From Saccostrea echinata (lineage: Eukaryota), in assembly GCF_033153115.1 (NCBI RefSeq), contig NW_026889761.1, forward strand, positions 24,428,001-24,492,000: DNA of 64,000 nucleotides, written 5' to 3'. Below are positions 24,701 through 64,000 of the stretch, piece after piece. The notes under the pieces were generated by a model. That model was not told the origin of the DNA and did not search any database. It saw only the letters and a list, made by a program, of their open reading frames with translations. The stretch's first letter is position 1. The number at the start of each line of letters is the position of its first letter. A program made the translations under genes and the position numbers.

Positions 24701-25457
24701 AGATTAACTTCAAATATAGTTTATGTTAACTTGATACTTGTAGAACAAATTACAATGGTCACTATAAAAGAGGTTTCAAATTCTCCACTAAAATCTGTCC
24801 TGGCATACTCTAGCTAATCTAAACATGCAAGATATACAAGGACAATCCAAGAAATCTGCATAATCTTCTACCCAACGACTGAAAAAAAAAATTATTCTGC
24901 AACTGGAAAGGACGTTTACAGTCCCTGTATTCCTGAAGGTCACAGTGACCTATATTTATGTTTTTGACCCACCTTCTTCAACATCAAATGATTTATAAAT
25001 CAATTATCTTTAGAATTAGTATACAGATCACTGCGCAGTATGAACAAATTTAACATTATTCGTAGGTAAGCATATTCTAAAGTTTGGTAGGTCATTTAAT
25101 GTAACCAATTCAATGAATGCAACAAAAAGCCTAATTTCCTTAAATGTATCAACAGTGCAAGATCAAAAAGACCTTGCTATAATAATCAATATGTGGCAAA
25201 ATAAACAGGTCATTGTGACCTACAATTAGGTATTATTATGCTTTCTGTAAGTTTATATTTGTACACACTATCCTCAAAATTCTTCACGAGACGCGGTCTT
25301 GAGTAGAAATGATCCAAAATAAAATAAATAAATAAAATAATCCAAAATGAGAAACAGCAATCATCAGAGAGCCAATTTTAGAAAGAGGTAAGTCATTGTG
25401 ACCTACTTTAGTGGTATATTATATCCTCCTTTTTGATATGGTTTGAATAAGTAGTAT

Positions 25458-25608
25458 GAACCCATGTCAGAAAGGCAACATATTCATGCTAACTAAAAAT
25501 TTTCAAGAACACATGAATTCCATAAAAACAATATAAGAATGCACACACCGTTTTAGCATCCAAGAAAATTTCAGTGCATAAACATGTTATCTCACTGGCC
25601 CAGGTTTC
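25458..25608 (-). ncRNA. Long hairpin H1 with loop motif AACGGUGUGUGC
   Basis: ~50-bp imperfect stem whose G-U pairs work only on the minus strand. Motif at 25541-25552. Confidence 0.7.
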
Positions 25609-26039
25609 TAATCCTTAATAATTTACATAATTTCCATAATGGAAACTGGCAATTAAGAAATTTGAGGGATATTTTTATGCTCTGTTTAATAAACACCAGA
25701 ATATACAGCATAAACCCATAGCAAATAACATCAACTACCTAACAGACCTCAAAGAAATGATGCTTATATAATCATGGCTTATATAGTTTTAAAGGTAGAA
25801 TCAATACTTCAACACTTATTCATAGAAATACTATAATGTATTCCCCTTGCTTCCCCATAACAAAACCCCTATCCTTCAATGCAGTGCAACAAATGCACAC
25901 AACAAATGCTCAACATGCAGTTACTTTTTTTTCAATGGCATGTACAGGTTTTGATTAAAGTATAAAGTGTTCCTTAATGTGGCAGGAAGCCTAAGCCCAT
26001 GCACTCTCCAAAAGGATGATATTGTTACATAGTACCCCA

Positions 26040-26315
26040 CATCCTCTCACAACCCCTCCCACCTGTCAAATCCCAATACTGGGTAGATCCTCTCACAACC
26101 CTTCCTACCATCCAAATCCCAACACTGGGTAGATCCTCTTGCAATCCCTCCCACCAGCCAAATCCCAATACTGGGTAGATCCTCTCATAACCCCTCCTAC
26201 CTCCAAATCCCAATACTTGGTAGATCCTCTTGCAACCCCTCCCACCATCCAAATCCCAATACTGGGTAGATCCTCTCACAAACCCCTCCCACCATCCAAA
26301 TCCCAATACTGGGTA
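26040..26315. repeat. 46-bp minisatellite, about 6 copies
   Basis: Unit tgggtagatcctctcacaacccctcccaccatccaaatcccaatac. Confidence 0.95.
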
Positions 26316-26408
26316 GCAATAGCAAGTTTTATAGGATTACATCTAGCCACCATATAATGTCAATACATGTACTTCCATTACTAAAATGTTACTTTCTTTT
26401 AACCTGAT

Positions 26409-26703
26409 TCTCGTGGCACGGTAGTTAGAGCATTTGGTCTAGAGTCATGGAATAAGGAGCTGATCCTTAAGAAACATGTTCAAATCCAAAAGTGGAATGT
26501 GGAGAATGGTCTTTTGAATGAGACCGTTTGAAGAGAGGTCTCGTGTTGTAGTAGGTGCTGGCAAGATAAAGATCAACCATCACTGCTCAGTGGCCCTGAT
26601 TGCCGAGTGTAGATATAAATTTGCAGCTCTCCACCAGCAAGCGGTGGTGTCTCAATATGAGTGAGAAATTCTTGAATGGATGTTAAACAGACAAACAAAC
26701 AAC
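26409..26703 (+). mobile_element. Same SINE family, diverged copy
   Basis: Head, core and (CAAA)n tail are recognisable. Confidence 0.8.
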
Positions 26704-27286
26704 ACTGATACTTGTTTAACAAATTACAATGGTCTCTTGTGTAAAGTAAATTAAATATCAGGACTATGCTTCATAAACCTGTATTTCTGAAGGTCACAGT
26801 GACCTACAGATTGGTTGTGTTACTGTGACTGTTCTCAACATCATGTGATTTGTAATTTTAATTATCCTAAGAATAGATCACTGCACTAGTAAAATGAACA
26901 AATTAAACATTATTCATAGGTAAGCCTAGGTAAGCATATTCTAAAGTGTGGTAGGTCATTAGGTAACAGATTCAATGAATGCAACAAAAACAAAAAACCT
27001 AATGTCCTCAAATGCAATCATTTTTCTGTCAAAGATCAATAAGGCCTTAATGGCATAATAAACAGGTCATTGTGACCTGAAATGAGGTAAATATACACAC
27101 TATCCCCAGGGTTCTCCTAAAAACAAGGTCCAATATCCAAGTCTTACAGTGGAAATAATATATAATCCAAAATGGGAAACAGCAATGATCGAGTCAATTC
27201 TAGAAAGAGGTAAGTCATTGTGACCTATACTTTAGGGGTATGTTATATCCTCTGAGGTTTGATATGGTATGAATAAGATCGTATCT

Positions 27287-27431
27287 GAACCCATGTCAGA
27301 AAGGCAACATATTCATGCTAACTAAAAATTTTCAAGAACACATCAATTCCATAAAAACAACAAGCACACACCGTTTCAGCATCCAAGAAAATCTCAGTGC
27401 ATAAACATGTCATCTCACTGACTTGGGCTTC
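27287..27431 (-). ncRNA. Long hairpin H2 with loop motif AACGGUGUGUGCUUG
   Basis: Paralog of H1. Motif at 27361-27375. Confidence 0.7.
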
Positions 27432-28370
27432 AACCATTAATAGTTTGCACAATTTTCACAGTGAAAACTGGCCTCCAAGAAGTGCATGATGCCAAATCAG
27501 GGCATACAGTTTAATGGCAGATTCAAAATAGTATGCTTGCACATATAAGCACCAGCTGGACTTGAAATGTGAGAACACAAAAGATGTTCAAATGAGACTG
27601 GTTTCTACCCAAACCAGCCATACTATTTTCTTGAATACATACAGCATAGTATCTGTACCAGCACCAGAGGTGCATGCATAGAGTTTGATAAGCTTAATAC
27701 CACATATGTACTGTAATGTAAACCCTTTGCCTTTCCCCAAACAGGAATAGAGTTGTGCACAAAGATCAACATCCCATCACCCAAATATTTATAATCAAAT
27801 ACATATGCTTAAAAATGACCCCCAAGCAATGGGACAAATGGGGACATTCAAAAACTCAACAGTTACTGGTGACCTTTTTATCTGTACTCCCTACTTAGAG
27901 GGCCTCATAATCATCTGCTTTTTTTTTTAACTTGCTGTTTTGGTGAGTATAGTTGCTCAGGGATTATAAGCCATCCCAACATTGGATAGCAATTTGCTGA
28001 GAATTCAGAAGCTACCTACAATACATCCAGGACACCCATACTTTTAAAAATAACTTCTGTAAACCTTAAGTCCTTACTGAATGAAATCCGTTCATACAGT
28101 GGATCTCACAGGAATGAAGATATGCTTCAATTTATGTACATGTACATTTTGGAGTCATTATGACTTATAATTAATTATGCTATAACACCATTGTCCTCAA
28201 CATTAAGTGACAAGGTCATTTACAGTAAGACTGACAAGTTAATTTACTAGATGACATGAAACAGCAATAAGAGCTAAACTTTTAAATGGATGCATGTGCA
28301 AGTCATTGTGACTTAATTTAAGGGTGAATCATGACCCCATGTTTTTTACTTCTATATGAAAAGGGAGTAT

Positions 28371-28516
28371 GAACCCAGGTCAGAAAGGCAACATATTCAT
28401 GCTAGCTAAAAATTTTCAAGGACACAAACTCAAATTCACAAAATAATATGCACACACCGTTTTAGCATCCAAGAAAATTTCAGCACACAAACATGTTACC
28501 TCACTGACTCAGGTTT
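28371..28516 (-). ncRNA. Long hairpin H3 with loop motif AACGGUGUGUGC
   Basis: Paralog of H1 with a compensatory A-U to G-C change (GCUGAAA/UUUUAGC). Motif at 28450-28461. Confidence 0.7.
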
Positions 28517-28883
28517 TGCACACAATTAATTTCCTCTGTGGAAATTGACATTCAAGAAATATGATGTAAATGCTCTGTTTAATAATACAGCACAAAGCCA
28601 GAGCAAATCAAAACTACTGCTGTCCTCAGAGAAATGATGCAGAATCAGGGCAAAGTTTCAACAAAAACAGTTTGCACAGATTGTGCACATCTACACCAAT
28701 ATGATTACTAGAGATGGTTGAATGGAGATCGGGTACCAAGATGAGGTGCATCACTATCAGAATACGAAATGGTCCCGGTATCTGTACTAATCCCAATGGT
28801 GCTTTATTTATATGCCTTCACTTAGAAATACAGTGAAATACTGTAATTTTATCCCTTAGTTTTCAGTCATACAAAAATAGAAG

Positions 28884-43021: not shown

Positions 43022-44478
43022 CTTCTGTAGGATTAAGTGCTGCTTGTCCCTGCTTCTGTAGGATTAAGTTCTGCTTGTCCCTGCTTTTGTAGGATTATGG
43101 TACTGCTTGTCCCGGCTTCTGTAGGATTATGGTACTGCTTGTCCCTGCTTCTGTAAGATTAAATACTGCTTGTCCCTGCATCTGTAAGATAAAATACTGC
43201 TTGCCCCTGCTTCTGTAAGGTTGGCTACTGCTTGTCCCTGCATCTGCAAGACTAAATACTGCTTGTCCCTGCATTTGTAAGATTGAATAATACTTGTCCC
43301 TGCATCTGTAAGATTAAATATTTCTTGTCCCTGCTTCTGTGAGATAAAATACTTCTTGTCCCTACTTCTGTAAGATTAAATACTGATTGTCCATGCATCT
43401 GTAAGATTGGCTACTGCTTGTCCCTGCTTCTGTAAGATTGGCTACTGCTTGCCCCTGCATCTGAAAGATTGGATGTTGCTTGCCCCCTGCATCTGAAAGA
43501 TTGGCTACTGCTTGTCCCTGTATCTGTAGGATTAAATACTGATTGTCCATGCATCTGTAAGATTGGTTACTGCTTGTCCATGCATCTGTAAGATTGGTTA
43601 CTGCTTGTCCCTGCATCTGTAAGATTAAATACTGCTTGTCCATGCATCTGTAAGATAAAATACTGCTTGTCCCTGGTTCTGTAAGGTTGGCTACTGCTTG
43701 TCCCTGCATCTATAAGATTAAATACTACTTGTCTCTGCATTTGTAAGATTAAATTATGCTTGTCCCTGCATCTGTAGGATTAAATACTGCTTGTCCCTGC
43801 ATTTGTAAGATTAATTACTGCTTGTCCCTGCATCTATAAGATTAAATACTGCTTGTCTCTGCATTTGTAAGATTAAATACTGCTTGTCCCTGCATCTGTA
43901 GGATTAAATACTGCTTGTCCCTGCATCTGTAAGATTAATTACTGCTTGCCCCTGCTTCTGTAAGGTTGGCTACTGCTTGCCCCTGCATCTGAAAGATTGG
44001 TTATTGCCTGTCCATGCATCTGTAAGATTAAATACTGCTTGTCCATGCATCTGTAGGATTAAATACTGCTTGTCCCTGCTTCTGTAAGGTTGGCTGCTGC
44101 TTGCCCCTGCATCTGAAACATTGGCTATTGCTTGTCCATGCATCTGTAAGATTAAATACTGCTTGTCCATGCATCTGTAGGATTAAATACTGCTTGTCCC
44201 TGCATCTGTAAGATTAATTACTGCTTGTCCCTGCTTCTGTAAGGTTGGCTGCTGCTTGCCCCTGCATCTGAAACATTGGCTACTGCTTGTCCCTGCATCT
44301 GTAAGATTAAATACTGCTTGTCCCTGCTTCTGTAAGATTAAATACTGCTTGTCCCTGCTTCCATAGAATTGGGTGCTGCTTGTCTTTGCATCTGTAAGAT
44401 AAAATACTGCTTGTCCCTGCATCTGTAAGATAAAATACTGCTTGTTCCTGCTTCTGTAGCATTAAATACTGCTTGTCC
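43022..44478. repeat. 31-bp minisatellite, about 47 copies, running into an assembly gap
   Basis: Unit ctgtaagattaaatactgcttgtccctgcat, with ggctac variants. Confidence 0.95.
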
Positions 44479-45687
44479 ANNNNNNNNNNNNNNNNNNNNN
44501 NNNNNNNNNNNNNNNNNNNNNNNNNNNNNNNNNNNNNNNNNNNNNNNNNNNNNNNNNNNNNNNNNNNNNNNNNNNNNNNNNNNNNNNNNNNNNNNNNNNN
44601 NNNNNNNNNNNNNNNNNNNNNNNNNNNNNAATCTCGAACTCAAAGGGACCATGAAAAATTTCAAAACATCTTAGGATTCTAAATATCCAGGGTAAAATAC
44701 TAAAAGAATAGGGTAAAGACTTATAAATCACTTAAATATATCCATGATTTTTAAGATATCAATGTTCGAGATACCAAAGTTNNNNNNNNNNNNNNNNNNN
44801 NNNNNNNNNNNNNNNNNNNNNNNNNNNNNNNNNNNNNNNNNNNNNNNNNNNNNNNNNNNNNNNNNNNNNNNNNNNNNNNNNNNNNNNNNNNNNNNNNNNN
44901 NNNNNNNNNNNNNNNNNNNNNCATATTTTTTAAATATTTTCTTTATGTATAAGATGAACCCCAACACCATGATGTTGTATATACAACTAAACATCAATGA
45001 GTTGGTGCCCATCTCAAAGGGCCTCGCTCTTACTAAAGGATATCAAGACGAAAGGGCATTGCAAAGGACCTTGACATTTGACTTGCACTTTCAATCCAAT
45101 GGCATTCTGGAAGATGTATGAGATTAAGCTCAAGGAAACACAAAACAATGATCATGATAATAATTTCACACAGATGTCTACTATGACCTTGAAACCTGAC
45201 CAAAACTTGGTTTAAAGCTAAAGTACACCACTAAACAAATTGGAATTCTATGGGTTACTGAGTAAATATGAGCTGAATAGAGCCAAGGCTTGTTATAAAA
45301 TAACACAAACCTCGTTGGATAAAAATCATATCCAACCATAAACCCTGGGAGATTTTATTATGTAAACAGAAATGTTGTTTACCACTGATCTTTGGTTTTA
45401 GAACTCTGCAAAGGGGAGAGAAATGTGCTCACTATGATAAAGATGACAAGACCTCGACTTCTGACCTAGAAGCTGTTCGTTACTTCACATCCTTTACCAC
45501 TTGGCACTATATATAGGTGAAGTATAAGCCAGAAAGGGCTACAATGAGAGAAAATATGCTCCAGATAAGGATTACATGCAGATGTGGTTTTTACTTTGAC
45601 CTTTTACTTAGAAAACTGGTTCAAGGTTACTGCAGTTTAAACCAGATTGAGCCAAGGGGTGAGAATGTATTCTGGATAAACAATATC

Positions 45688-45719
<32 letters not shown>

Positions 45720-46551
45720 TGATCATTGTCATGGCGGGCCCTAAATATTGAAAACAAAACCACTTACTTTACATCTACGTCTGGACAGAGATGCTGAGGT
45801 GAGGCGAGGGTTGTGGTGGATGTACAAACAGATGTGTGTGCAGATGAGACAGTCAAACATTAACTTAACAATATTGAAAACAATAAACATTGGAATTCAC
45901 ACGCTGAACAATATACAAATACATGGAAAATACAAAAAAAAATGCACTTATCAAAAAGGACATATACCAAAAATTGTAGAACACAGTACAATATATGCTA
46001 TAATTCAAATACTGCATAGAGGATTCTTTTTTATGAAAAAAAGAAAGCACCTAAATCTTATCTTTCTCCTGATCACATCTAAAATGTAGGTTAAATGCAG
46101 CATTCAATGACTATGCAGCAGATGCAACATTGTAAGTGGCAGCATGAGAGCCAGGAGACTATGCCAAAAATAGGCAATGTAGGTCAGATGCAGCATCCAA
46201 AGTAAGAATCAAAGTCAGCATCCAAAGATATACGATAAAGAACAAGATCAGTTTGGAACTAAATCTAAATAATGAAAACAATCTGAGCCAATTAATCAAG
46301 AATGTAAGTCAGACGCAGCATCAGAGAAAGCATCTATAGAAGCATCAAGTGCAAATTTGGTTTAATTACTGCTTGTGAGAAGCTGAGGATAAGTCTAAAT
46401 CATAAGTTCATTAACCCAAGTAACTAAAGCATAAAAATACAGTTCATATGCATTAGCAAAGATATGCATCAAATGAACGGTTGATATGGTCTCAGAATGA
46501 GACAGACAGACAGACATAGTGATAATAATATTATACATCAATACATTAATA

Positions 46552-46898
46552 CAGTAAAACTCGGTTTTAGCGAAGTTCTGGGGACCTGCGAATTTACTTC
46601 ACTATATCCATAATTTGTTATATCCGTATAACAAAGTATTTAAAGTATACAAAACGAGTTCGCAATACAGATTTTTTTCATTTAAGTATGTTTACCAAAT
46701 GTATTTAACTTCCAGGAGACACAAAATCAGTTCATTATAACCGTAAATTTGCTATATCCGAGTTCGTTATATTTGTACAATTTAAGAAGAAATTGTTATG
46801 AATTTCGCCGGGAATTAAAAAAAAAAATGCTATATCCGTAAATTCATTATATTGGATATAATGAATTTATCCGTGTTTGTACTAAACGAGTTTAACTG
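46552..46898. mobile_element. pogo/Tigger-like MITE
   Basis: TA-CAGTAAAACTCG ... CGAGTTTAACTG-TA. Confidence 0.8.
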
Positions 46899-48078
46899 TA
46901 CTAGTGTTGAACAACATGGAAACTTTCAAAATTTATCATCACTTATAATCAGTAGCTTTAAATTGATCAAGGATACAAATTGTCAGAGCTTTCAAAAAAA
47001 AATTCATGGCTAGCAGATGCCGTGTCAGGAAATTGAAGGTACGGTTTGTGTCCAATTTGTTTTGGGGAAAAAATGAACAAAACAATGCATACAGAAATGT
47101 TCATTATGCAAAGCACACTACATTTCATTTTCTCAGCAATGGAATTCATAAAATTCCTAAAGAAAGATTTGAATCGGTAAGCGTATGTCGATGGTCAACC
47201 AATTATCAGTGACAATCTTTTCATTACTTATCATAACTTAATACATTGAATAAATCAACCACGAAGTATAATTAAACAAATAGTTATACCTCAGAGAAGG
47301 AACCTATAATTAAAGATAAGTAAATAAATAGTGAAAAGAAATGGATCCCCACCTTCAAACATATAAACATTAAACTTTTACAGTAATCTTACTCCTAATG
47401 GAAAGATTTTATAAGGGAAATTTGATTACGAAATTTATTTCCTGAAATTGATACTGTTGTTTTAGACTGTATTTACAGAGAGAAGAAAAATGTCCTTTTT
47501 ATTTTTACAAAAATGAACCTCTGAGCTTACTGACAAATTACAGTAAACAGTAATGGGGTGGAAAACTGAAATTACCCATGTATTTACCGATTACAAAGTA
47601 CTAATAATTACTTCAATCTTAGAAAAATAAATAATAAAGTGAAATAATCTCAGTAAAGCAATAAATAATCAAATTTTAAATTTTAACTGAGCTCGCACAA
47701 TCTTGGGGATAAGAAAGGGAAATTTATAAGCTATGAATTATTTATGAAGTTTAGAATACAGGAAATCCATGAGATATACAAATTCACACAAACGCAATAC
47801 TATAATATATCTATATATACATTACAAATCAATAAAATTTTAACTTTAACATTGATCACAGACACATCAGGGACATCTCAAGGTCATAACTAAAAATTAC
47901 AGGTAAATGAATTAAAGGTAAATTAATGGAAATTACACACATCACAGTAGTAAGCCTAAATTAATAGTTTAATGTCTAATTCATATCCCCAAAAATTATT
48001 TTTGAAAATAAAGAAATATTAAATTGAGAACAAATTAGAAATTAGATTTGAATAATTAATGTAACAAATTTAAATTAC

Positions 48079-48149
48079 TCTCATGAATGCAGTGGCTAAA
48101 TAACGGTGTGTGCTTGAGTTGAGGTATTTAACCACTAGCCTTCATGAGA
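48079..48149 (-). ncRNA. Hairpin K1 with loop motif GCACACACCGU(U)
   Basis: + strand tctcatgaa..agtggctaaata[22-nt loop]tatttaaccact..ttcatgaga. One C/A mismatch becomes G-U on the minus strand. Confidence 0.65.
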
Positions 48150-48505
48150 AAATCGGAGAGAGAAAGGGGCTTCATTTTATCTTAATAATCAATTTAAGTA
48201 TTAAATCTAAAAATTTTACAAAGGACTGAAATAAAAAAAGGTAAAATCAGAATACTTGACTTTAGTCTAATTATAAAACAGAGGAAAGAAGATAAGTTCT
48301 AACAATACGTTCTAATTAACCAAAATATTCAAGGGACAAAGGATTTATAAAGGATCCTTGAGATGCCCCCCCAAAATATACAATGTATTTATACTACAAT
48401 GTAACCTAGATCTTCAAAAATATTTCCATGTGTTTAAAAAAATTAGCTTTTACTTCCTAAAAAGTAATCCCAATTACAACTATAGCATCCAAATTACAAC
48501 TATAG

Positions 48506-48735
48506 CAGGGGTTCGAATCCCACTGTGGGACGTGGAGACTGGTCCTTCAGATGAGACCGTATAAACTGAGGTCCCATGTCACAGAAGGTGTTGGCACAGA
48601 AAAGGCCCCTCACTGCTCAAAGGCCCTAAGTGCCAATCAAGTATAGGTCAAAATTTGTAGCTCTCCACCAGCAAGTGGTGGCGTCTCCATATGAGTGAAA
48701 AATTCTCGAGGGATGTTAAACAATAAACAAACAAC
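48506..48735 (+). mobile_element. 5'-truncated copy of the same SINE
   Basis: Starts at the B box. ACAACTATAGCA on both flanks is a probable TSD. Confidence 0.8.
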
Positions 48736-49476
48736 TATAGCAACTATAGCAGACCCGTGGAAAGGGGGGGGTTAGAAAAGATTATAAGTCCTACTTCATA
48801 AACCAAATAAATACTTAGGTTTACAATCAACAAGACCTATCTGAGACATACATAAAATGAATGCACAGTACAAATACAAAATATCAAACAAAATACTGAA
48901 CCCATCATGCACACACAGGAAGTAATGAAAATGGAAAAGTGGAAAAGAAACCCTCTTTACAATGAAAGCTCTAGATTTTACTTCTTTTCAATAATTTAAT
49001 GATTTCAATTTCTCTTTAGTGAAAATTTGAATAACTTTAACTTTAAAACCTGAAAAATTGAAATTGATGGAAAATAAATTTAACCCTATTTATCGATGAA
49101 AACAAGAAAGAAGGAATTAACACTTAGTCTTAAGAAATGAATATAAGCTTTTATTATAACTTTAATTAATGTCAATGCCTGTATGATGGTGATACTAAGG
49201 TCAACTTTAAATGAACACAAAATCCAAAGGGAGATTGTAAAAATTAACTAAACCATTCAGTTTAACTTGATCAGTCAACTTATTTTAGTTGTAGAAAAAT
49301 TTAATCACTAGTTATTGTAATTTAGGAAAATTCATAATTTAATTAACCTCTTGTTTAATTTTTCCTAAGTTTTTAATTTTATTTTAGTTTTAGATTTGAT
49401 TAAAATTAAAGAACAGGAGGAAAATGAAGCCCTTGGCACTATTTATTAACTAAATTAAACCTTAACATTTAGTTAC

Positions 49477-49547
49477 TCTCCTGAATAACTACATCTAAAT
49501 AACGGTGTGTGCTTTCATTGAGATATTTAGATGTAGTAACCAGGAGA
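49477..49547 (-). ncRNA. Hairpin K2 with loop motif GCACACACCGU(U)
   Basis: + strand tctcctg..actacatctaaata[22-nt loop]tatttagatgtagt..caggaga. Same geometry as K1 with different stem sequence. Confidence 0.65.
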
Positions 49548-49897
49548 AAATAAGGACAAATTTAAACTTATTTAAACTCAATATGGTCTTACAAAATTAG
49601 AATTTAAAAAAAGGGGGGTATATTTATGTTATTAACAAAAAGTTAATAATTCCTGAATTATTTATGTCTGAATGATATTGTGTATTGAGATTCCTAGATG
49701 GAAATTACAATATGACTTAGGAGAAAATCTAACTCAAATCTTACTCAAGTTTTATCCTTTAGATATTGAAATGAAAGGAGAAAATTTAATAATATTTATA
49801 GTGAAAAATTTAGGAAATTTAGGAAAAAAAATTACTCTTACTTAAATATAAACATTAGTTTTATACCTAACAGACTGAAGGGAAAGGGGGAGATTAT

Positions 49898-50443
49898 TTA
49901 AAAAGAGGTGAGAATAGGGAAAAGAATACCAGTTACTAAAGAGACATCCACATTCCTAAACAAATGCTGCACCAATTCTCCTCCTAATGCTGCAAAGCCT
50001 CGCCTCACAGGTTCCCTCATGGGTGATGGCTGTTCAGGAGGGATCTCTGTCATCGGTGACCCAAGGCTAGAAAGCCGAGGATGACCCTCAACAACCTGGG
50101 AAGACGGCAGTTCCATCTCCTCAGTCTGCCCAGCCTCCTCCTCCACTGGAACCTGAGCAGGCTGAGGAGATGGCAGCGCCACCTCCACGGTCTGGTCAAG
50201 TTCTAGCCAAGGAAGGGCTATGACTGGCTGAGGGGACGGCAGACTCACTTCCTCAGGCTGAACAAGCTCTAGCTCAGGAGCTGCTATCACAGACTGGGGA
50301 GATGACACAGCCACCTCTACAGTCTGCTCAAGCTTCTCCTGAGATAGATCCTCTACAGCCTCAGGGAGTGGCAGTGCCGCCTTCTCAGGCTGCTGAAGAG
50401 CATCATCAACCTTCACCATCGGCTTCACCCTGGACCTTCGCAC
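49898..50443 (-). CDS. Putative coding exon 2: acidic E/P/Q/S-rich low-complexity protein with ~22-aa internal repeats
   Basis: 181 open codons, GC well above background, pyrimidine tract plus AG directly before GTG 50443. Repeats such as QTVEVAVSSPQSVIAAPELEL / QPEEVSLPSPQPVIALPWLEL. Confidence 0.7.
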   Translation of the reverse strand: MRRSRVKPMVKVDDALQQPEKAALPLPEAVEDLSQEKLEQTVEVAVSSPQSVIAAPELELVQPEEVSLPSPQPVIALPWLELDQTVEVALPSPQPAQVPVEEEAGQTEEMELPSSQVVEGHPRLSSLGSPMTEIPPEQPSPMREPVRRGFAALGGELVQHLFRNVDVSLVTGILFPILTSF

Positions 50444-54482: not shown

Positions 54483-55711
54483 GCCATATATATAGCTTCC
54501 TGGTGTAAGAGAGATATATAAAATTACTCATTACTTCTGTTTTGCCTACACTCAGTATCTAGCATTTTTATGTTTTGTATTGCTGTATGTTAATGTGTTT
54601 TCTTGTCCTTTTGAGTGTTTACAAATCATACTTACCCTACTTGTATCTCAAGGTGGCTGCAATAATGTAGCCCTCTCTAATTTTTTTTGGGGGGGGGGGG
54701 GGGGGGAAGGGGCCACAACTCCTTAGGATCTCTGTAATGGTGCAAGTGCGGGAGTGAATCACTCCCGCACTAATTTCGGCTCAAATTTTCAGTAAGTGGC
54801 TATTTTATTAATGTATCTTACCTGAACTCATAAAATGTAGTTAAGCAAGACATGAATTGATCCAAAAATATACAGAACAATCCATATATCGGTTATTTTT
54901 TGTGTATGTCAACATCAAAACTTGAATTTACCCTGGTATCCACCATGTTTACTCACCTGTTGATCGATTTTATTTTGGAACAACCAATGAGAATTCAGGA
55001 TCTAGGGAGCGTATCTTTTAGGATGTCCCTTAATTTAAACATAAATATCGCTGTGTATGAAAAAAAATATCACATGGAATGCTTTTATTTATCAATGGTT
55101 AGTGATACCATACAACACAAAAATTTATCAACAACAACATTTACTTTATCAAGTGATTCTACTTTCAAATGCAAGTCTCAGTACATCATGTGAGAACTGT
55201 CATGGCTGCTGAGGAGAACAACTGGTAAACAAGCAGATTTATTTTACATGGTTTTTGCGTATAAAGGGCTATGTTGTTGACAGTGATTAACATTTCCGTC
55301 TTATTGGAAGTAAGTTGTATGTAAAAAAAATTTTTGCCTGCAGTCGGCCGTATCTAAAAAATATATTTGCACCATTACGGAGATGCAGTGGAATTGTAGC
55401 CCTCTCCTGAAAATATCAGATATAAAAAAAAGGACTACATTATTGCAGCTAGTATCTATGTTATGTCCCCAAAGGGACCATGAATGGCAAATAATTACCA
55501 TTCTATTCTATTCAAAGTCCAGTCCAGAGGAATTACAGAGAGAGTGGGATATAACAACAAAATTCTATCTTGCCATAAAAAGTTTAAAGTATAATTAAAT
55601 TTATTCAGAGAGGGAGATGTAAATCAAATAGCACTCTAATCCCCTCCCTCTTCCCCTTTCCTTCTTAAATAACATTTGTTACAAGTGAATCTTTTATAAC
55701 TTATCACTTAC

Positions 55712-55783
55712 AGGAAAGTCCACGACGTAGTCACTGAACCACCGGGGGCGCTGTCGAATTCTTGTAGATCGTCTTGGCTCCAT
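55712..55783 (-). CDS. Putative coding exon 1 of an unknown ~205-aa protein (MEPRRSTRIRQRPRWFSDYVVDFP)
   Basis: GC-rich island. Acceptor ttattatag just upstream (exon starts 55790), ATG at 55783, phase-0 donor CCT|GTAAGT that matches the phase of the 50443 exon. Confidence 0.6.
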
Positions 55784-57830: not shown

Positions 57831-59850
57831 TAAGCATAACCATTTTCTGTTGAAAATATTTGAAAAGTTGGTTACTCTTATCCCACACTTTTTGTTTCAG
57901 TACAGTCAAACCAGGGCAATGTGTAATGTAATTTTCAAGTCTGGACAATTTCCTTCTTTTAATTTTGCTTTCCAGTTTTTTTTTCAAGTAAGTTATCATA
58001 ATTTTTCATTCCCTCCCCCAAAATAGGTTTTTCATGTCTGGACAATTTTCCTTTTTTAATTTGTTGAAAATTTTAATTTTAAATTATTATTATTATTTTC
58101 ATTGCTTTTCACAGTTTCATTAAATGAGTTTTCATATTTCTTCCTAGCTGCCCCCACCCTCCTGATACTACATGTGTCTGCATCTAAAAATGCAACTCTA
58201 GAATAATTATGCACGGCACTACATGGCCAATGATGACTTTTGTTATTATTTGTTATAAAACAAACATGTTTTGGACACCTGAAATTTATTTAGAATGGAA
58301 GAAGAAATTTACATCCCCCAAGAGCATGCATAGTCGACATTTCCCGCCATAATTGCACCTTTATTTAAACCGTATAAAGCACACAAAACTAATAAATAAC
58401 TTTGTTATACCTTTAAAAATTAGTTTCTATATAAATCTATACTAAAAAAAGTCTGACATTTCAATGTTTTACTGAGCGGGCATAAAAAAATCGATGTTTG
58501 CCCACAGATCAAGATATTGGACCTGTCAGCAAGATATTGGACCGCTGTGGGGGGTATTTTACGTCACGCTTAATTTGCATTCGTTATTATCCGCAGTTTT
58601 GGCGGAATTATACGACACGAGTCCATTTGTATTCGACAGTTACGAAACTGACCAAGTTAAATCCGCATTGTGGATAATTGAAATTAACATTTAAATTTTG
58701 TCATCTGCATTGCAATCATGGAAGGAAATGGAAGGTTTGCTTCATATAATGACGAAGAAATTGAAAACATAATGGAAAACCGGGATAGCAGCAATACGAA
58801 AAATGTGGTGAAAGTGGCTGAAAGAATTTTGTCGGAATACCTAGCCCACAAGTACGAATCCACCGTTGAAATTTTTTTTAATGGAAAAAGCAGGAACGAA
58901 GCTGCCGAATTTCTAATTTTTTATTGTGAAGTTCGAAAAAGAGATGGTACAATATATGCGAGATCTACAATGATAGCAATGCGATTTGGATAACAGAGAG
59001 TTTTTCTAAAATCTTACAAGTGAGACATCATAAATGACAGTGATTTTAAAGGCGCTAACGACATGTTCAGTGCTTGTTTGGTGAAAATAAAGAAGGAAGG
59101 TATCCAAACAGAACATAAAACACTGATTTCTGATGCCAATATGAAAAAACTTTACTAATCTAATGTATTTGATACAACTACACCCAGAACTTTACAACAA
59201 AAGGTATTTTTTGAAATCATGATGTTTTTTTGCAATCGGGGACGAGAGAATCTACGCAATATGAAACCAACGGATTTCCAAATTCGTGCAGATTCGGAGG
59301 GGAGGAGATATGTCGGAAGCAACGTGTCCAGGCTTACTAAAAATCATTGTGAAGCTATAGAAGACCATGACAATACGGCTGCTAGAATGTACGAAAAACC
59401 CGGTAAGTTTTTTTTTTTAACTTGGGTTGGAACTGTATCAGAGGCCCCTATAATTCTTAACGGTAAATTTCAAATAAACTGATAAAACCTACCCACTCTT
59501 TATGAAAACATGTAAATATATAACTTGTGTTTTTGTACAAAAGGGGGGGGGGGGGGTAATCTAGGGCTTTTTTATAAAACAAAAAATCAGGTGCCTGTGA
59601 CTTTATTCAACCACGTATATTTTCATTATAAAAACAGTTAATTGAGGCATTGTTTAATTACAGGTAATCCAGCATGTCTCGTCAGCAGTTTTGAGAAGTA
59701 CATATCGAAGCTAAATCCAGCGTGTGAGACCTAAAAAAATGTGGCGGATCAAGCAGGAGTCTGGTATGACAACATGGTTGTGGGAAAAAATACCCTGGGC
59801 TGTATGATGGCGACAATAAGTAAAGATGCCAACTTATCTTTTGTTTATAC

Positions 59851-62800
59851 GGCTAATTGTATTTGGCGCATCGGCGCGCTCGCGCAATAGATTTTGTTTA
59901 TTAAATAAATTATCGCTTATACAATTCTGTTAGCATCGGGCGCGATATCATAAATAATCAAAGTACTGAGAAAAACAGAGAGCCGGGCCCATTTACATAT
60001 GTACAGAGAAGTGAACAAGACCGTTTTACATGAAACATACATTGTAATTACAGATGAATAACAACTAGACACTGGAAGAATATGTAACACATAAAAATAT
60101 ATTTATGGTATATAGTATGAATAAAAAATGTTTAAGAAAAAATTAAATAAAATGCAGTTTGAATTTAACAGCGTAAACAATTTATCACATGCATCGTTTT
60201 GGGGTCTAACATCGCTTACAGAAGTAAATAAACATTGATGCAGCAAGGTCAAACATTTATACACAGACGGGTCCTTAGCGGGGAGTTTTGCATAAAGGTG
60301 TGCATCGGGTCACGTGCTCCCCGCATTAGTGTTAGCCTGGTAACAGAACCTTTATTTATAGAATGTGAAGCTGGCAGACTTGATGAAATTACCTTTCGCA
60401 TTTTTTAGACAAATAATTCATTGAAGAAAAGGGGAGAAAGAGTATTACCATTATTTTCTTTTCTTTTTTTTTTTTTTTTTTTTTGGAGAATTTTTTAGTT
60501 AACTTAAATTTGTTTAATTAAGTGTTTGTATTGCTTCAAAGGTGGTTGAGCATACGTACTATATTCTTACTCGTATTTAATTTGGCGGTGAGGAAGCAGC
60601 ATTTCCGGTTGAACACCGTAACATAAGCCGGCTATTGCTATACGAGCAATGAGCCCGGCTAAAAAGAGAAAGTTTCATAGATGGAATTATGTTTTTGAAG
60701 CTTCAACATCATTATTTAACTGCCTGTGGTTTCTTTTATTCATGGCCACTAATTAAGGTACTCCGATCCTCAGGTTCTGAAATTCAACTTTTAAGTAATT
60801 GAAATTGCTCACAAAAATGTCTCTGATTTCACATAGTAACGTGAATTTACCCATGGAATTTCTTCAAAGTTCATCATTATAGTTAATCATATCATATAGG
60901 GAAAATTATGAAATCTTAAACATATTTTCAAGAAATGCGAATAAAAACACCAGCTATGCATTTTCTAATTGAAAATTGATCAACAAATATAATTTAGGAT
61001 AGGAAAATATAGGTATCCAGGCATTTGGAGAAAATTGCATCATTTTTATGCTTATACAGTATTTTAATTCTTCTTTTTACTTCAATCGTCATATAATACA
61101 TAGTGTAAAAAGCTTGTGCTATCATTGCTAGACATCAAATATCACATCTAATTTCATATTATACTAATAAGCAATCGTATCTAATGCTAGACTAAAGGAA
61201 ATTCGATTTCTCTAAAAATGAATTTATTTTTTTTTTCTTTTATGGGATACAGATGTCAACTTTTTACAATATCGTTTCTAAGACTTCAAAGAACCTTGAA
61301 ACATATTAAGATGCATAAAATGAAAATTGTTGCACGAAAAGATCTTAATTTCAAGCTTCATTTTGAGACTTTTTAAATAAAATAATGAATTTAAGAGTTA
61401 TCCTTCCTGGCTGAGGATTGGATATCCTTAATACAGTAAATACACTGGTTTTATCAATTTTCATTGGCATCAATTTTTGTGCAATCAGCGAATGACTCAG
61501 TATTTCGTGAACACAGGTCATTATAAAACTTTTTGATATGCTTCTTACTCTAATGACCATCAAATTCTATTTTAATTTTCACTCTGCAAAACACAAAACC
61601 ACAAAAATTAATGTTTAAAGAATGTTGATGGAACCATTGTACATGTATTTTATATGACTGGATTTTTAATGAGATAAATGGTTGAGAAGACTACAATATG
61701 GAGGCAGGACTTTATGTATACTGGCACATGATCTGTAGTGCAAATGATCTGTTTAGGTTTACAGGCCAGTCATTTCTGTAACTAAAGTTACCCCCCCTCC
61801 TGAAATAAAGACAAGTTAATTTTTAATAGTAGTATTATTTTAATACGTAACAAGGAATCTTTGTCAAACACTGATACCAATCAAGTCTCTAAAAAGGGGG
61901 TTAAACTCTAGAGTCTAGGGTCATTACGTAATACCGGTAAATTTTTGTGATACATAATGATATATATATATACGAAGGTTGTCAAAAAGTTCGTGGACAA
62001 ATGCTTAAATTTCTTTATAAAGTCCGCAATGGCAAACATGTATGATAATATCTTAATATAGACCATGATTGAGTAAATATACAAAAATTAAACAATGCAC
62101 ACTATTTACTGAACATTATAGGTGTAAATACTTTGTATATGCAAGTTGCACGGGCCAGTCTGACGTAACGCTTATTTCATGACAACGTCAGAAATATGAA
62201 TTTTGGATTTTTATCGCATGTTCATAGACGCACGCTATTTTTCTTTATTATGCCACATTGCCAAATGTGTGCAATAAAATTTATGTATAGATTAATTATA
62301 ATTAATTTAAATTTTAAAATTCAAAACAATACACAATAATTTACGAGCGTCATCAATATGAACACTTCGTAAACACAGGATGCACAGCCCAGCCCAACGG
62401 CGTTATATTTATAACAACGTCATGAATAGGAATATATCCTATTTTCATCAAATAACAGTGGTTTTCCACTTCTTGTATGTCTCCAGAATTTTACACACCG
62501 TTGAAAAATCGTTTTCACCAATTACAAATCACTAGACTAAATATTTTCCAATAAATTTAAGTTGTTTGAATAAATATTTTGTTTTTGATGACGTTTCAAC
62601 CATATTAACCATAATTGTATGATTGGACGCTGTCCCGTTAGGATGGCCGACGTCGCTTTTTCTGTCAATTTTTGAAACATACTTCTTGCGGTTTTCACTT
62701 AATATTTTCATTGTCTATTTAGTAAGCGATACTAAAGGTATCAGAAAATGGCGATAACCGTTTTATTTGTGATATATTAAATTTTTATTCAGCTTTGACT

Positions 62801-63042
62801 CGTTTTAAAAAGAAAATGATCATTTCAATCAGATCACTTTATTTAAAAGTTCATGGCATTTTAACCCTGGTCAGTGCGCACTATCGGCGACCTTTTTACA
62901 AAAATATAACGTTCAAACAATAAAAATCAAACTATTCTGACTTGGATTTTCATAACTAATATTTTGGTATACAATAAGCATATCTTGAACCATTCATTTT
63001 GACAAAAACGCCCTTGTCCACGAACTGTTTGGACAACCCTTG

Positions 63043-63078
<36 letters not shown>

Positions 63079-63452
63079 TATTGAAAGTAGGCCAACTCAA
63101 AAAATTGGGGTAAAATTCGGATTACTCTAGCACAAATTGTGGTAAGGCATGCAAGGATCAAAGGGGATCCAGATCCAAACTGACATAGAAAAATTACTAA
63201 AGCTATGCCTCGGACCTCTTTCCCTTGCGATTTGAGCCAACACCTCCTAGGGAAAAATTTCTGGATCCACCCAACAAAAAATTACAATCGGGCTCGGGCT
63301 GTCGACTTGAATATAAGCGATAATGCTTAAATTATTGAGAAAATCGATGTCATTTGAGTGTTTTAATGCAAGGAGAAAATACTTATGTGATATTAGGATG
63401 AGATGGACGAGATGGACGCGCTGGCGCGCCGACGCGCCGAATACAATTAGCC
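59851..63452. mobile_element. 3.6-kb non-autonomous TIR transposon with 8-bp TSD inside the Crypton ORF
   Basis: TIR GGCTAATTGTATTTGGCGCATCGGCGCGC vs GCGCGCCGACGCGCCGAATACAATTAGCC. TSD GTTTATAC at 59843-59850 and 63453-63460. Excision restores the reading frame. Confidence 0.9.
61973..63042. mobile_element. Mariner-like MITE inserted in a (TA)n tract, nested in the 3.6-kb element
   Basis: Imperfect TIRs CGAAGGTTGTCAAAAAGTTCGTGGACAA / TTGTCCACGAACTGTTTGGACAACCCTTG, with TA runs on both sides. Confidence 0.8.
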
Positions 63453-64000
63453 GTTTATACTAATCATTGCATCAGGGCCACGTGTATTACCTTACTTGAC
63501 GAGAGTGGATATGAGGGTAGACACATCATCGGAATATCTAAACATAAGTCAGAGACGAGTCTTAAGCATTATTCTTCACATCTCAGTGAAAATAAGATCC
63601 ATGGCATGTCCAACGCTTTGTCCGAAAAAATTCTTCCCCAGACTGTGACCGTCACCGAGAAAACAACACTCACTGAGCAGACAACTTCGGAAGAATCTGT
63701 GTTAAGTTTGAGTGACCTTGATTTATTAGAAATACCAATGCTGCCTACAAACCTCAATTCCCCATATGAGAAAAATGCGCAAAAACAAGACTTTAATTCG
63801 TGCAACTTCAACCAGTGTACCATTGTCTTTAACAAATACACAAACTTAATTAGTTTCATTATGTGTTCATAATTCTGAGTACTTTTTTTCACCTGTTTAA
63901 AATAAAGTTTAATGGCAAGTAAATTGTGCTTTATTTATTAAATATGTTGTAATAAAAAGTGAAAGGTATAACAAAACATTTATTGACTAGTTTCTCAGGC

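What the first reader, a model, noticed from the sequence alone, without database searches (positions are those of the whole stretch)
25458..49547. Candidate multivalent kissing-loop system: 3 hairpin loops complementary to 2 hairpin loops 20-24 kb away on the same strand
Seen: on the minus strand, hairpins H1-H3 expose an invariant AACGGUGUGUGC (25541, 27364, 28450). The unrelated hairpins K1/K2 expose its exact complement GCACACACCGUU (48102, 49501), extending to 15 bp for H2:K1. The two families share only this 12-mer, and it is the invariant part of otherwise drifting loops. They bracket the array of ~25 non-coding exons. Known analogies: Dscam docking-selector pairing, bicoid/oskar loop-loop dimerisation, and complementary intronic elements that drive back-splicing. 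Inference: a 2x3 loop-loop code that loops out or circularises the exon array, selects alternative 3' ends, or cross-links RNA isoforms into a scaffold. An alternative is an orientation-independent DNA protein site (it contains a Myb-like AACGG).
Basis: partly seen in the sequence, partly recalled or inferred. Interest (0 to 1): 0.93.

Follow-up and report, generated by a model that had tools for sequence, protein, structure and literature searches.

The report
Oyster RNA hairpins with complementary loops
Two unrelated families of conserved RNA hairpins on the same strand of a 24-copy oyster locus carry exactly complementary, near-invariant 12-base loops, so they probably pair with each other, but no expression or binding data could be obtained.

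Summary
The five exact 12-mers are real (0/100 shuffles reach five). H1-H3 and K1/K2 belong to two distinct hairpin families absent from Rfam.

The locus is a segmental duplication of at least 47 kb, present at about 24 places in the genome (Saccostrea echinata). These paralogues served as a comparative series:
- Stems stay 98.7-98.8% paired, through wobble and compensatory changes.
- G:U cells outnumber A.C cells 362:3 (H) and 69:3 (K) on the window's minus strand, so both fold as single strands on that strand and their loops are complementary, not identical.
- Searches not seeded on the 12-mer find it exact in 47/52 K and 48/55 H copies. All five K variants hit the CpG.
- In the arms of an unrelated MITE-like element the same 12-mer decays like neutral DNA.
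- In 24/24 loci K lies 5' of H, 10-57 kb apart. K starts 0.3-0.4 kb after the stop codon of a Saccostrea-only orphan gene.

Loop-loop pairing is the best explanation (about 0.45) but is unproven. The 12-mer never varies, so H:K covariation cannot be tested. All loops are identical, so this is not a combinatorial "code".

The scan holds no earlier finding of this on other DNA.

The parts
25466..25598 (-). H1 hairpin (about 133-nt core); 12-mer AACGGUGUGUGC at 25541-25552
   Evidence: (MFE -42 kcal/mol, z -4.2 on minus; -20.1, z -0.6 on plus)
27295..27421 (-). H2 hairpin; 12-mer at 27364-27375
   Evidence: (-48.4, z -5.2 on minus vs -22, z -2.0 on plus)
28379..28507 (-). H3 hairpin; 12-mer at 28450-28461
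   Evidence: (-55.5, z -8.4 on minus vs -24.9, z -2.7 on plus)
48078..48152 (-). K1 hairpin; the loop reads GCACACACCGUU on the minus strand (plus-strand 12-mer at 48102-48113)
   Evidence: (-30.6, z -6.2 on minus vs -25, z -2.3 on plus)
49476..49550 (-). K2 hairpin; the loop reads GCACACACCGUU on the minus strand (plus-strand 12-mer at 49501-49512)
   Evidence: (about equal on both strands)
49898..50443 (-). Second coding exon, with stop codon, of a Saccostrea-specific orphan gene (Pro/Glu-rich, hydrophobic C-terminal tail). K2 starts about 0.35 kb downstream of the stop
55709..55783 (-). First coding exon of the orphan gene (25 aa, 88-92% identical to the S. cucullata proteins)
35600..42800 (-). 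Array of repeated exon-like units with minus-strand donor motifs. The one unit read has stops in all frames. It lies between K and H
   Evidence: (families D2-D4, D8, D14, D17)
43018..44921 (.). 31-nt satellite array followed by the two assembly gaps (44480-44629, 44782-44921), which flank a non-repeat 152-nt island
25629..25645 (-). Small conserved hairpin (UUUCCA-N-UGGAAA) just upstream of H1 in RNA sense. Equivalents lie near 28528-28544 (H3) and about 27450-27470 (H2, compensated variant UUUUCA..UGAAAA)
25388..25403 (-). Conserved box GGUCACNAUGACUURC about 65-75 nt downstream of H1 in RNA sense. Also at 27210-27225 (H2) and 28298-28313 (H3)
47702..47722 (-). Polypyrimidine tract ending in AG (acceptor-like) about 0.4 kb downstream of K1, kept in all three subfamilies

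Best explanation
H (about 130 nt) and K (about 75 nt) are two unrelated families of structured RNA elements transcribed from the window's minus strand. In each, the stem is a scaffold that evolves by wobble and compensatory changes. The apical region presents a fixed 12-nt sequence, AACGGUGUGUGC in H and its exact complement GCACACACCGUU in K.

The most likely function of that shared block is direct H:K loop-loop base pairing: 12 bp, -20.5 kcal/mol, roughly -12 after both loops are opened.

K elements sit just downstream of the stop codon of an orphan gene. H elements sit 10-57 kb further downstream on the same strand. Pairing could therefore act in two ways:
- In cis, it would fold a long primary transcript back on itself across the exon-like array.
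- In trans, it would link K-bearing RNAs to H-bearing RNAs.

Every locus carries several copies of each element, and all ~24 loci use the same 12-mer. The interaction would therefore be multivalent and not locus-specific.

Shown: the hairpins, their strand, the selection on stems and on the 12-mer, and the conserved K-then-H arrangement.

Inferred: transcription, the pairing itself, and any consequence of it.
For: - Five exact sites, far above chance.
- Strand: 33/33 H copies fold much better in 12-mer sense (mean -49.9 vs -24.7 kcal/mol). 22/27 true K copies fold better in the opposite sense.
- G:U vs A.C cells on the minus sense: H 362:3, K 69:3.
- Structure: 98.7% and 98.8% of cells are paired, against 32-51% when partners are slid. 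0/500 shuffles reach the covariation score. K has 5 pairs with double compensatory changes, in 43 cells.
- Unbiased genome-wide conservation: K 47/52 exact, and all 5 variants hit the CpG. H 48/55 exact.
- Within the hairpins, the 10 non-CpG positions of the 12-mer have pi = 0. The rest of the loops have 0.16-0.31 and the flanks 0.43.
- The same 12-mer decays neutrally in MITE arms.
- The 12-mer is the only complementary block longer than 6 nt between the families.
- Loops are accessible: opening costs 2.9 and 5.3 kcal/mol against -20.5 for the duplex.
- The conservation pattern (loop fixed, stem sequence free) is the opposite of miRNA precursors.
- K lies 5' of H on the same strand in 24/24 loci even though spacing varies five-fold.
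- Minus-strand ORF and donor motifs flank and separate the elements.
Against: - There is no expression evidence of any kind.
- It is unknown whether K and H are on one transcript, or whether they are exonic or intronic.
- The 12-mer is invariant, so there is no H:K covariation. The rare variants are mostly CpG decay and show no bias toward wobble-compatible changes.
- The 24 loci descend from one ancestor, so orientation is only one bit of evidence.
- K and H may be ancient inverted duplicates (weak same-sense similarity next to the 12-mer). That would explain where the complementarity came from without any pairing function.
- G.T tolerance would give the same strand asymmetry for single-stranded DNA hairpins.
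- A 12-bp double-stranded DNA site would be conserved equally well.
- A 12-bp helix between closed loops is longer than classical 6-7-bp kissing complexes and raises topological questions.
Confidence: 0.45

Rival explanations
1. The 12-mer is a double-stranded DNA site for a sequence-specific protein, for example a four-finger zinc-finger, a Myb-like factor, or a factor derived from the transposase of the MITE family that carries the same motif. The site works in either orientation. The hairpins are a separate feature.
For: The same 12-mer lies in both arms of a MITE-like palindrome with several hundred copies, a typical place for a transposase-binding site. Conservation of a 12-bp block with sharp edges fits a protein footprint. 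The motif contains YAACGG in K and in the MITE.
Against: This does not explain why the motif sits in the apical loop of a strand-specific hairpin in both families. It does not explain why the motif is lost together with hairpin integrity in the decayed 'fourth copies'. H has AAACGG rather than YAACGG. H and K are internal to the duplicated unit, not at its ends. With thousands of repeat families in a 923-Mb genome, the chance that one of them carries a given 12-mer is not negligible (my estimate, about 0.1).
Confidence: 0.2
2. The complementarity is a relic of an ancient inverted duplication. H and K now work independently, each loop being read by its own single-strand RNA-binding protein (a UG-repeat binder on H, a CA-repeat binder on K), and they do not pair.
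For: There is weak same-sense similarity next to the motif: TCTTGGATGCT..12-mer in H and TCATGAATGC..12-mer in K plus sense. The motif cores are (UG)n and (CA)n. From general knowledge, these are typical sites for TDP-43/CELF-like and hnRNP L-like proteins. Not tested here.
Against: Two independent binders would not be expected to hold exactly the same 12 positions fixed, including the non-repeat AACG/CGUU end, while everything else diverged beyond recognition.
Confidence: 0.13
3. Both loops are docking sites for a third RNA rather than for each other. Candidates are small RNAs processed from the MITE-like palindromes, which contain the 12-mer and its complement as a stem. For H, another candidate is the 18S rRNA decoding-region strand, which K resembles.
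For: In the MITE the 12-mer is base-paired to its complement, so dicing would give small RNAs of both polarities. The genome's own rDNA carries TGTACACACCGCCCGTC. The H loop could form 10 bp with it (one G:U), and the K loop matches it at 9 of 10 positions.
Against: Complementarity to the MITE does not extend beyond 12-13 nt. The rRNA match was found after the fact, and I estimate a chance probability of a few percent. That rRNA segment is buried in mature ribosomes (general knowledge). There are no small-RNA data.
Confidence: 0.1
4. H and K are parts of a large mobile or selfish repeat. Their hairpins act as single-stranded DNA or element-RNA structures in its propagation, or have no host function at all.
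For: The unit is multi-copy (about 24 loci on many contigs) with copies up to 98% identical. G.T pairs are also tolerated in single-stranded DNA hairpins. Another first-reader note in this genome (s1-810075) describes repeat families with hairpins that look tuned for single-stranded DNA.
Against: There are no transposase, reverse-transcriptase or other long ORFs. The unit's edges are ragged and unequal, not defined termini. H and K are internal. The hairpins are conserved by compensatory change across subfamilies whose flanks no longer align. No match was found in viral or metagenome contigs.
Confidence: 0.07

Closest known systems
bicoid mRNA 3'UTR domain III loop-bulge dimerisation (Drosophila)
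   Same: Two different single-stranded elements presented by a structured region are Watson-Crick complementary. This allows closed complexes or open oligomers (PMC7357161). The sequence of the exposed element matters rather than that of the stem.
   Different: bicoid uses 6 bp within one about 100-nt domain of one 3'UTR. Here there are 12 bp between separate hairpin families 10-57 kb apart, several copies of each, in about 24 paralogous loci. Binding is untested.
oskar SL2b (OES) kissing loop
   Same: A hairpin downstream of a coding region whose apical loop acts as a sequence-specific RNA 'sticker'. Multivalency drives granule assembly (PMC11567897).
   Different: The oskar loop is a 6-nt palindrome (CCGCGG) that gives homodimers. 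The 12-mer here is not self-complementary, so only H:K hetero-pairs are possible.
Dscam1-type docking site / selector sequences and other long-range intronic pairings
   Same: Conserved complementary RNA elements kilobases apart on one pre-mRNA, flanking an array of duplicated exons (PMC4691838, PMC3535345).
   Different: Dscam has one selector per variable exon, each different and competing for one docking site, and the exons are coding and mutually exclusive. Here there are 2-4 + 3-4 identical elements outside the array, and the exon-like units are non-coding.
Inverted-repeat pairs that promote back-splicing, and viral genome cyclisation sequences (from general knowledge, not read here)
   Same: Short or long complementary elements near the two ends of a long RNA bring those ends together.
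   Different: Back-splicing repeats are usually tens to hundreds of nt of intronic repeat. Cyclisation sequences belong to RNA virus genomes. No circular or cyclised RNA is shown here.

Membership tests
Kissing-loop / loop-loop RNA interaction elements (oskar, bicoid, retroviral DIS type) | Complementary sequence exposed in hairpin loops or bulges | tested here: met
   The 12-mer lies in the apical region of both consensus structures. Opening costs are 2.9 and 5.3 kcal/mol.
Kissing-loop / loop-loop RNA interaction elements (oskar, bicoid, retroviral DIS type) | Both partners present on RNA strands of compatible polarity | tested here: met
   G:U vs A.C counts are 362:3 (H) and 69:3 (K) on the same strand. 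The fold asymmetry agrees. This is inferred from sequence, not from RNA data.
Kissing-loop / loop-loop RNA interaction elements (oskar, bicoid, retroviral DIS type) | Palindromic loop allowing homodimers (oskar / DIS subtype) | tested here: not met
   AACGGUGUGUGC is not self-complementary. Only H:K hetero-pairs are possible.
Kissing-loop / loop-loop RNA interaction elements (oskar, bicoid, retroviral DIS type) | Demonstrated RNA-RNA complex, abolished by loop mutation and rescued by compensatory change | not testable with these tools
   Needs in vitro transcripts or proximity ligation.
Dscam-type docking/selector system | One selector next to each alternative exon, each different, competing for one docking site | tested here: not met
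   There are 3 H + 2 K against roughly 25 exon-like units. All lie outside the array, and all carry the identical 12-mer.
Transposon terminal or subterminal inverted repeats | The repeats mark the ends of the mobile unit, and the arms are similar beyond a short motif | tested here: not met
   Homology with paralogues runs 4.5-8 kb beyond H and more than 14 kb beyond K. Only 12 nt are shared.
miRNA precursors | Arm sequence conserved and loop free to vary; match to a known family | tested here: not met
   In K the arms are rewritten by compensatory change while the loop is fixed. There is no Rfam hit at H or K at E<=1.
Any Rfam 15 family | Covariance-model match | tested here: not met
   the only hits are sub-threshold matches to an unrelated perfect palindrome at 29.2 kb.

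The most novel reading that the evidence does not exclude
A lineage-specific, genome-wide RNA 'sticker' system. About 24 paralogous loci each produce RNAs carrying 1-4 K and 1-4 H hairpins with one universal 12-nt complementary loop pair. Transcripts from all loci would cross-link, in cis or in trans, into multivalent RNA networks such as granules or scaffolds. Alternatively, they would cyclise long primary transcripts. This would tie the fate of an orphan tail-anchored protein's mRNA to a companion non-coding RNA.
Probability: 0.2. Interest if true: 0.85.

Novelty: new variant of a known kind. Interest (0 to 1): 0.62.

Why it matters
Sequence-specific RNA-RNA contacts between cellular RNAs are rare. 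The best-known cases (oskar, bicoid) use 6-nt loops in a single gene.

This is a candidate hetero-complementary 12-nt loop pair, built into two independent hairpin scaffolds. It has been kept through many rounds of locus duplication, while stems, spacers and even the neighbouring protein diverged.

The ~24 paralogues form a ready-made comparative series. A 12-nt target is also easy to mutate and rescue. If the pairing is real, it would be a tractable natural example of multivalent RNA-RNA recognition outside model organisms.

If the pairing is not real, H and K are still two new families of structured RNA elements in oysters, with strong evidence of selection.

Tried and rejected
The S. cucullata loci that encode the orphan-protein relatives could not be fetched.
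Structural analyses rest on 64 held loci. Genome-wide statements rest on pattern searches.
- Rfam: nothing at H or K.
- Literature search for the 12-mer: only an unrelated primer.
- Viral and metagenome contig scans for both loop blocks: 0 hits.
- The first H-context pattern was too unspecific. It was replaced.
- Whole-hairpin duplexfold energies were discarded as meaningless, because the program allows long bulges and shuffles reach similar values.
- Giant-transposon reading: rejected for lack of ORFs and defined ends, and because H and K are internal.
- Plus-strand splice donor next to H (GAG|GTAAGT): rejected as a canonical donor because GT is GC in about half the copies.
- C/D-box snoRNA and Pol III A/B-box readings of H: considered by eye and dropped, because the boxes are not conserved or are wrongly spaced.
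- Poly(A) signals near K: their number is what chance gives in 70% A+T DNA, and none is conserved.
- Wobble-bias test on the rare 12-mer variants: too few events, mostly CpG decay, uninformative.
- Earlier scan notes by sequence and by words: nothing.


Full report
OBSERVATION

The 12-mer AACGGTGTGTGC occurs exactly five times in the window: three times on the minus strand (25541, 27364, 28450) and twice on the plus strand (48102, 49501). There are no further sites even with one mismatch allowed. The expected number is 0.11, and none of 100 dinucleotide-preserving shuffles reaches five.

When all five are aligned in one orientation, H1-H3 are copies of one element and K1/K2 of another. At the level of conserved consensus blocks, the 12-mer is the only complementary run longer than 6 nt between the two families. 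The 15-bp extension for H2:K1 is real in the window but is not conserved elsewhere.

ASSEMBLY GAPS

The two N runs (44480-44629 and 44782-44921) lie in or next to a 31-nt satellite array. Two paralogous copies of the locus, on contigs C9 and C28, have no N there. Both are colinear with the window, in the same orientation, on both sides of the gaps. The order and orientation of H and K are therefore supported. Only their exact distance is uncertain.

GENOMIC CONTEXT

The 12-mer occurs 539 times in the 923-Mb genome, against 18 for the reversed control. It occurs in three contexts.

(a) MITE-like palindrome. Most copies are the two arms of an about 165-bp MITE-like palindromic element, where the motif is part of the stem.

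(b, c) H and K. The rest belong to H and K. These always occur together: a cluster of 1-4 K and a cluster of 1-4 H, in opposite orientation, at 24 loci on many contigs.

The window from about 18-21 kb to its right end is colinear at about 93-98% with C9 and C28. C9 and C28 match each other for about 42 kb and beyond the window's right end. The left edges of the three pairwise comparisons differ. The unit is therefore a segmental duplication of at least 47 kb with ragged edges. H and K are both internal to it, and it has no long ORFs. I reject a giant transposon with subterminal repeats.

The genome is Saccostrea echinata, because the contig length recorded for an annotated protein equals that of C9.

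On the minus strand the window encodes a two-exon orphan gene (55783-55709 and 50443-49901, stop at 49898). Its product is a Pro/Glu-rich protein with a hydrophobic C-terminal tail. Its only detectable relatives are in S. echinata and S. cucullata, and it has no Pfam family. In every paralogue whose held sequence reaches that far, this ORF ends 0.3-0.4 kb upstream of the first K hairpin.

Between K and H lies an array of repeated exon-like units. Their strong donor motifs are on the minus strand 16 times and on the plus strand twice. The one unit I read has stops in all frames.

ARE H AND K REAL STRUCTURES, AND ON WHICH STRAND?

The paralogues fall into at least three subfamilies. The flanks of the most divergent subfamily no longer align with the window, while the hairpins do. 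This makes them a usable comparative series.

- H (34 sequences, 40 pairs): 98.7% of cells are standard pairs.
- K (27 sequences, 22 pairs): 98.8% of cells are standard pairs.
- Control: when the 3' partners are slid by 1-3 columns, only 32-51% are paired.
- No shuffle out of 500 reaches the observed covariation score in either family.
- K has five pairs with double compensatory changes, for example UA x14 / CG x12.

The structures are strongly strand-specific. Written in the sense of the window's minus strand, H has 362 G:U cells against 3 A.C cells, and K has 69 against 3.

- All 33 H copies fold far better in that sense (mean -49.9 vs -24.7 kcal/mol).
- 22 of 27 true K copies fold better in that sense. 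The five exceptions are K2-type, with margins of at most 2.8 kcal/mol.
- The window's own hairpins behave the same way.

Mutational strand bias cannot produce ratios of this size. The simplest reading is selection on single-stranded folding of the minus strand. Given the minus-strand ORF and donor motifs, that single strand is most probably RNA. Single-stranded DNA would tolerate G.T pairs too and is not formally excluded.

Both hairpins fold on the same strand, so their loops are complementary rather than identical.

IS THE 12-MER UNDER SELECTION?

My first impression of invariance was biased, because I had located copies through the motif. Two unbiased tests followed.

1. Masked BLAST. I masked the 12-mer in the query and searched the held loci. 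This found 38 H-like copies. 32 of the 34 intact ones keep the motif exactly, and two have a CpG-to-TpG change. The decayed 'fourth copies' have lost both hairpin and motif. One of 11 K2-type copies has the CpG change.

2. Genome-wide pattern searches, with the 12 positions left as N.
   - K context: 52 copies, 0 in the control, 47 exact. All five variants hit the CpG, and one solitary decayed copy has one further change.
   - H context: 55 genuine copies, 0 in the control, 48 exact.
   - The five loop bases next to the K motif take at least seven forms.

Within the alignments, which are seeded on the motif, the ten non-CpG positions have pi = 0 in both families. The rest of the loops have 0.31 (H) and 0.16 (K), the stems 0.09 (H) and 0.17 (K), and the flanks 0.43.

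In the MITE arms the same 12-mer decays like neutral DNA. By my count of the listed arms, about 24 of 47 are exact, 8 have CpG-only changes and 15 have non-CpG changes.

The motif is therefore constrained specifically in H and K.

It is not the only fixed loop block. K also keeps UAUCUCAA, and H keeps UUGGAUGCURAA just 5' of the motif.

MECHANISM

The conservation pattern is a fixed loop sequence on a stem whose sequence is free to change as long as it pairs. This is what is expected of a hairpin that presents a sequence for recognition. It is the opposite of a miRNA precursor.

The two presented sequences are exact complements on one strand. The duplex is worth -20.5 kcal/mol, and opening the loops costs about 2.9 (K) and 5.3 (H) kcal/mol. 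Direct H:K pairing is the most economical explanation, and I put it at about 0.45.

Three points limit the claim.

- The motif never varies, so no H:K covariation can exist. The rare variants are mostly CpG decay and show no wobble bias.
- The 24 loci descend from one ancestor, so 'K 5' of H in 24/24 loci' shows retention, not 24 independent events. The five-fold variation in spacing (nearest gap 10-49 kb) does show that presence and orientation are what is kept, not distance.
- I could not establish transcription, or whether K is in the 3'UTR or an intron. No poly(A) signal or donor is conserved around K. An acceptor-like tract about 0.4 kb past K1 is conserved in all subfamilies.

If the loops pair, the system is a universal multivalent sticker, not a set of addresses.

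RIVALS

- A double-stranded DNA protein site, about 0.2. The MITE link is in its favour. It does not explain the loop placement in strand-specific hairpins.
- A relic of an inverted duplication, now read by two independent single-strand binders, about 0.13. The weak same-sense similarity is in its favour. The exact coincidence of the two conserved blocks is against it.
- A third RNA as the common partner, about 0.1. The candidates are MITE-derived small RNAs, or 18S rRNA. The decoding-region strand of 18S is present in this genome's rDNA as TGTACACACCGCCCGTC. It matches the K loop at 9 of 10 positions and could pair 10 bp with the H loop. This is a post hoc observation.
- A selfish or mobile repeat, about 0.07.

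COMPARISON WITH KNOWN SYSTEMS

- Closest in logic is bicoid domain III. An apical loop pairs with a complementary bulge through 6 bp, giving closed dimers or open oligomers (PMC7357161).
- oskar SL2b uses a 6-nt palindrome for homodimers and granule assembly (PMC11567897). The 12-mer here is not palindromic, so that subtype is excluded.
- Dscam-type docking/selector systems (PMC4691838, PMC3535345) need one distinct selector per alternative exon. That requirement is not met here.
- Rfam has no matching family. The literature search for the motif found only an unrelated primer. The loop blocks are absent from viral and metagenome contig collections.

TOOLS THAT WERE UNAVAILABLE

The orphan gene was handled exon by exon.

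VERDICT

Two new families of structured RNA elements are well supported. Their complementary, selectively maintained loops are real. Loop-loop pairing is the leading hypothesis but is unproven.

Noticed in passing
L041-L054 (e.g. G000:C1:9301339-9302007); several hundred copies genome-wide: A MITE-like element: an about 165-bp near-perfect palindrome (arms begin TAAGCATTGAATC... and carry the 12-mer about 45 nt in) followed on one side by a conserved tail of about 60 nt. Within it the 12-mer decays neutrally.
   Followed up: partly
window 25629-25645, 28528-28544, about 27450-27470; and 25388-25403, 27210-27225, 28298-28313: Each H unit also has a small conserved hairpin just upstream (UUUCCA..UGGAAA, with a compensated variant in H2). 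About 65-75 nt downstream it has a conserved box GGUCACNAUGACUURC. The box's reverse complement reads like a 5' splice site (GAG|GTAAGT), but GT is GC in about half the copies.
   Followed up: partly
G000 rDNA (66 copies) vs window 48102-48113 and the H loops: The K loop GCACACACCG matches the 18S rRNA decoding-region strand GUACACACCG at 9 of 10 positions. The H loop could form 10 bp (one G:U) with that rRNA strand. This was noticed after the fact, and I estimate a chance probability of a few percent.
   Followed up: partly
window 49898-50443 and 55709-55783 (minus): Orphan gene with relatives only in Saccostrea (59-70% identity). Database names such as 'MamJ-like' and 'MICAL-like' reflect low-complexity sequence only. 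In the most divergent subfamily the ORF runs into TGG|GTAAGG, which suggests a further coding exon there.
   Followed up: partly
window 47702-47722 (minus): An acceptor-like polypyrimidine tract ending in AG, about 0.4 kb downstream of K1, conserved in all three subfamilies. It raises the possibility that the K hairpins are intronic.
   Followed up: partly
window 29203-29320: A perfect 56-nt inverted repeat with a 6-nt spacer. It gives sub-threshold Rfam miRNA hits. It lies inside a stretch (28888-29757) that is absent from the C9 and C28 paralogues, so it is probably a recent insertion.
   Followed up: no
window 28888-29757, 30493-33914, 59850-63453: Stretches present in the window but missing from both close paralogues (C9, C28). 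They are probably window-specific insertions. The second is rich in TGACCTTTGACCTTGA-type inverted repeats and poly-T/poly-A runs.
   Followed up: no
window 26019-26316: A 46-nt tandem repeat (about 6 copies) between H1 and H2.
   Followed up: no
G000 contigs C70 and C126: These two contigs carry hits with identical scores and identical relative spacing for both H and K. They are probably the same locus assembled twice (haplotig or duplicate contig), so I counted them as one locus.
   Followed up: no
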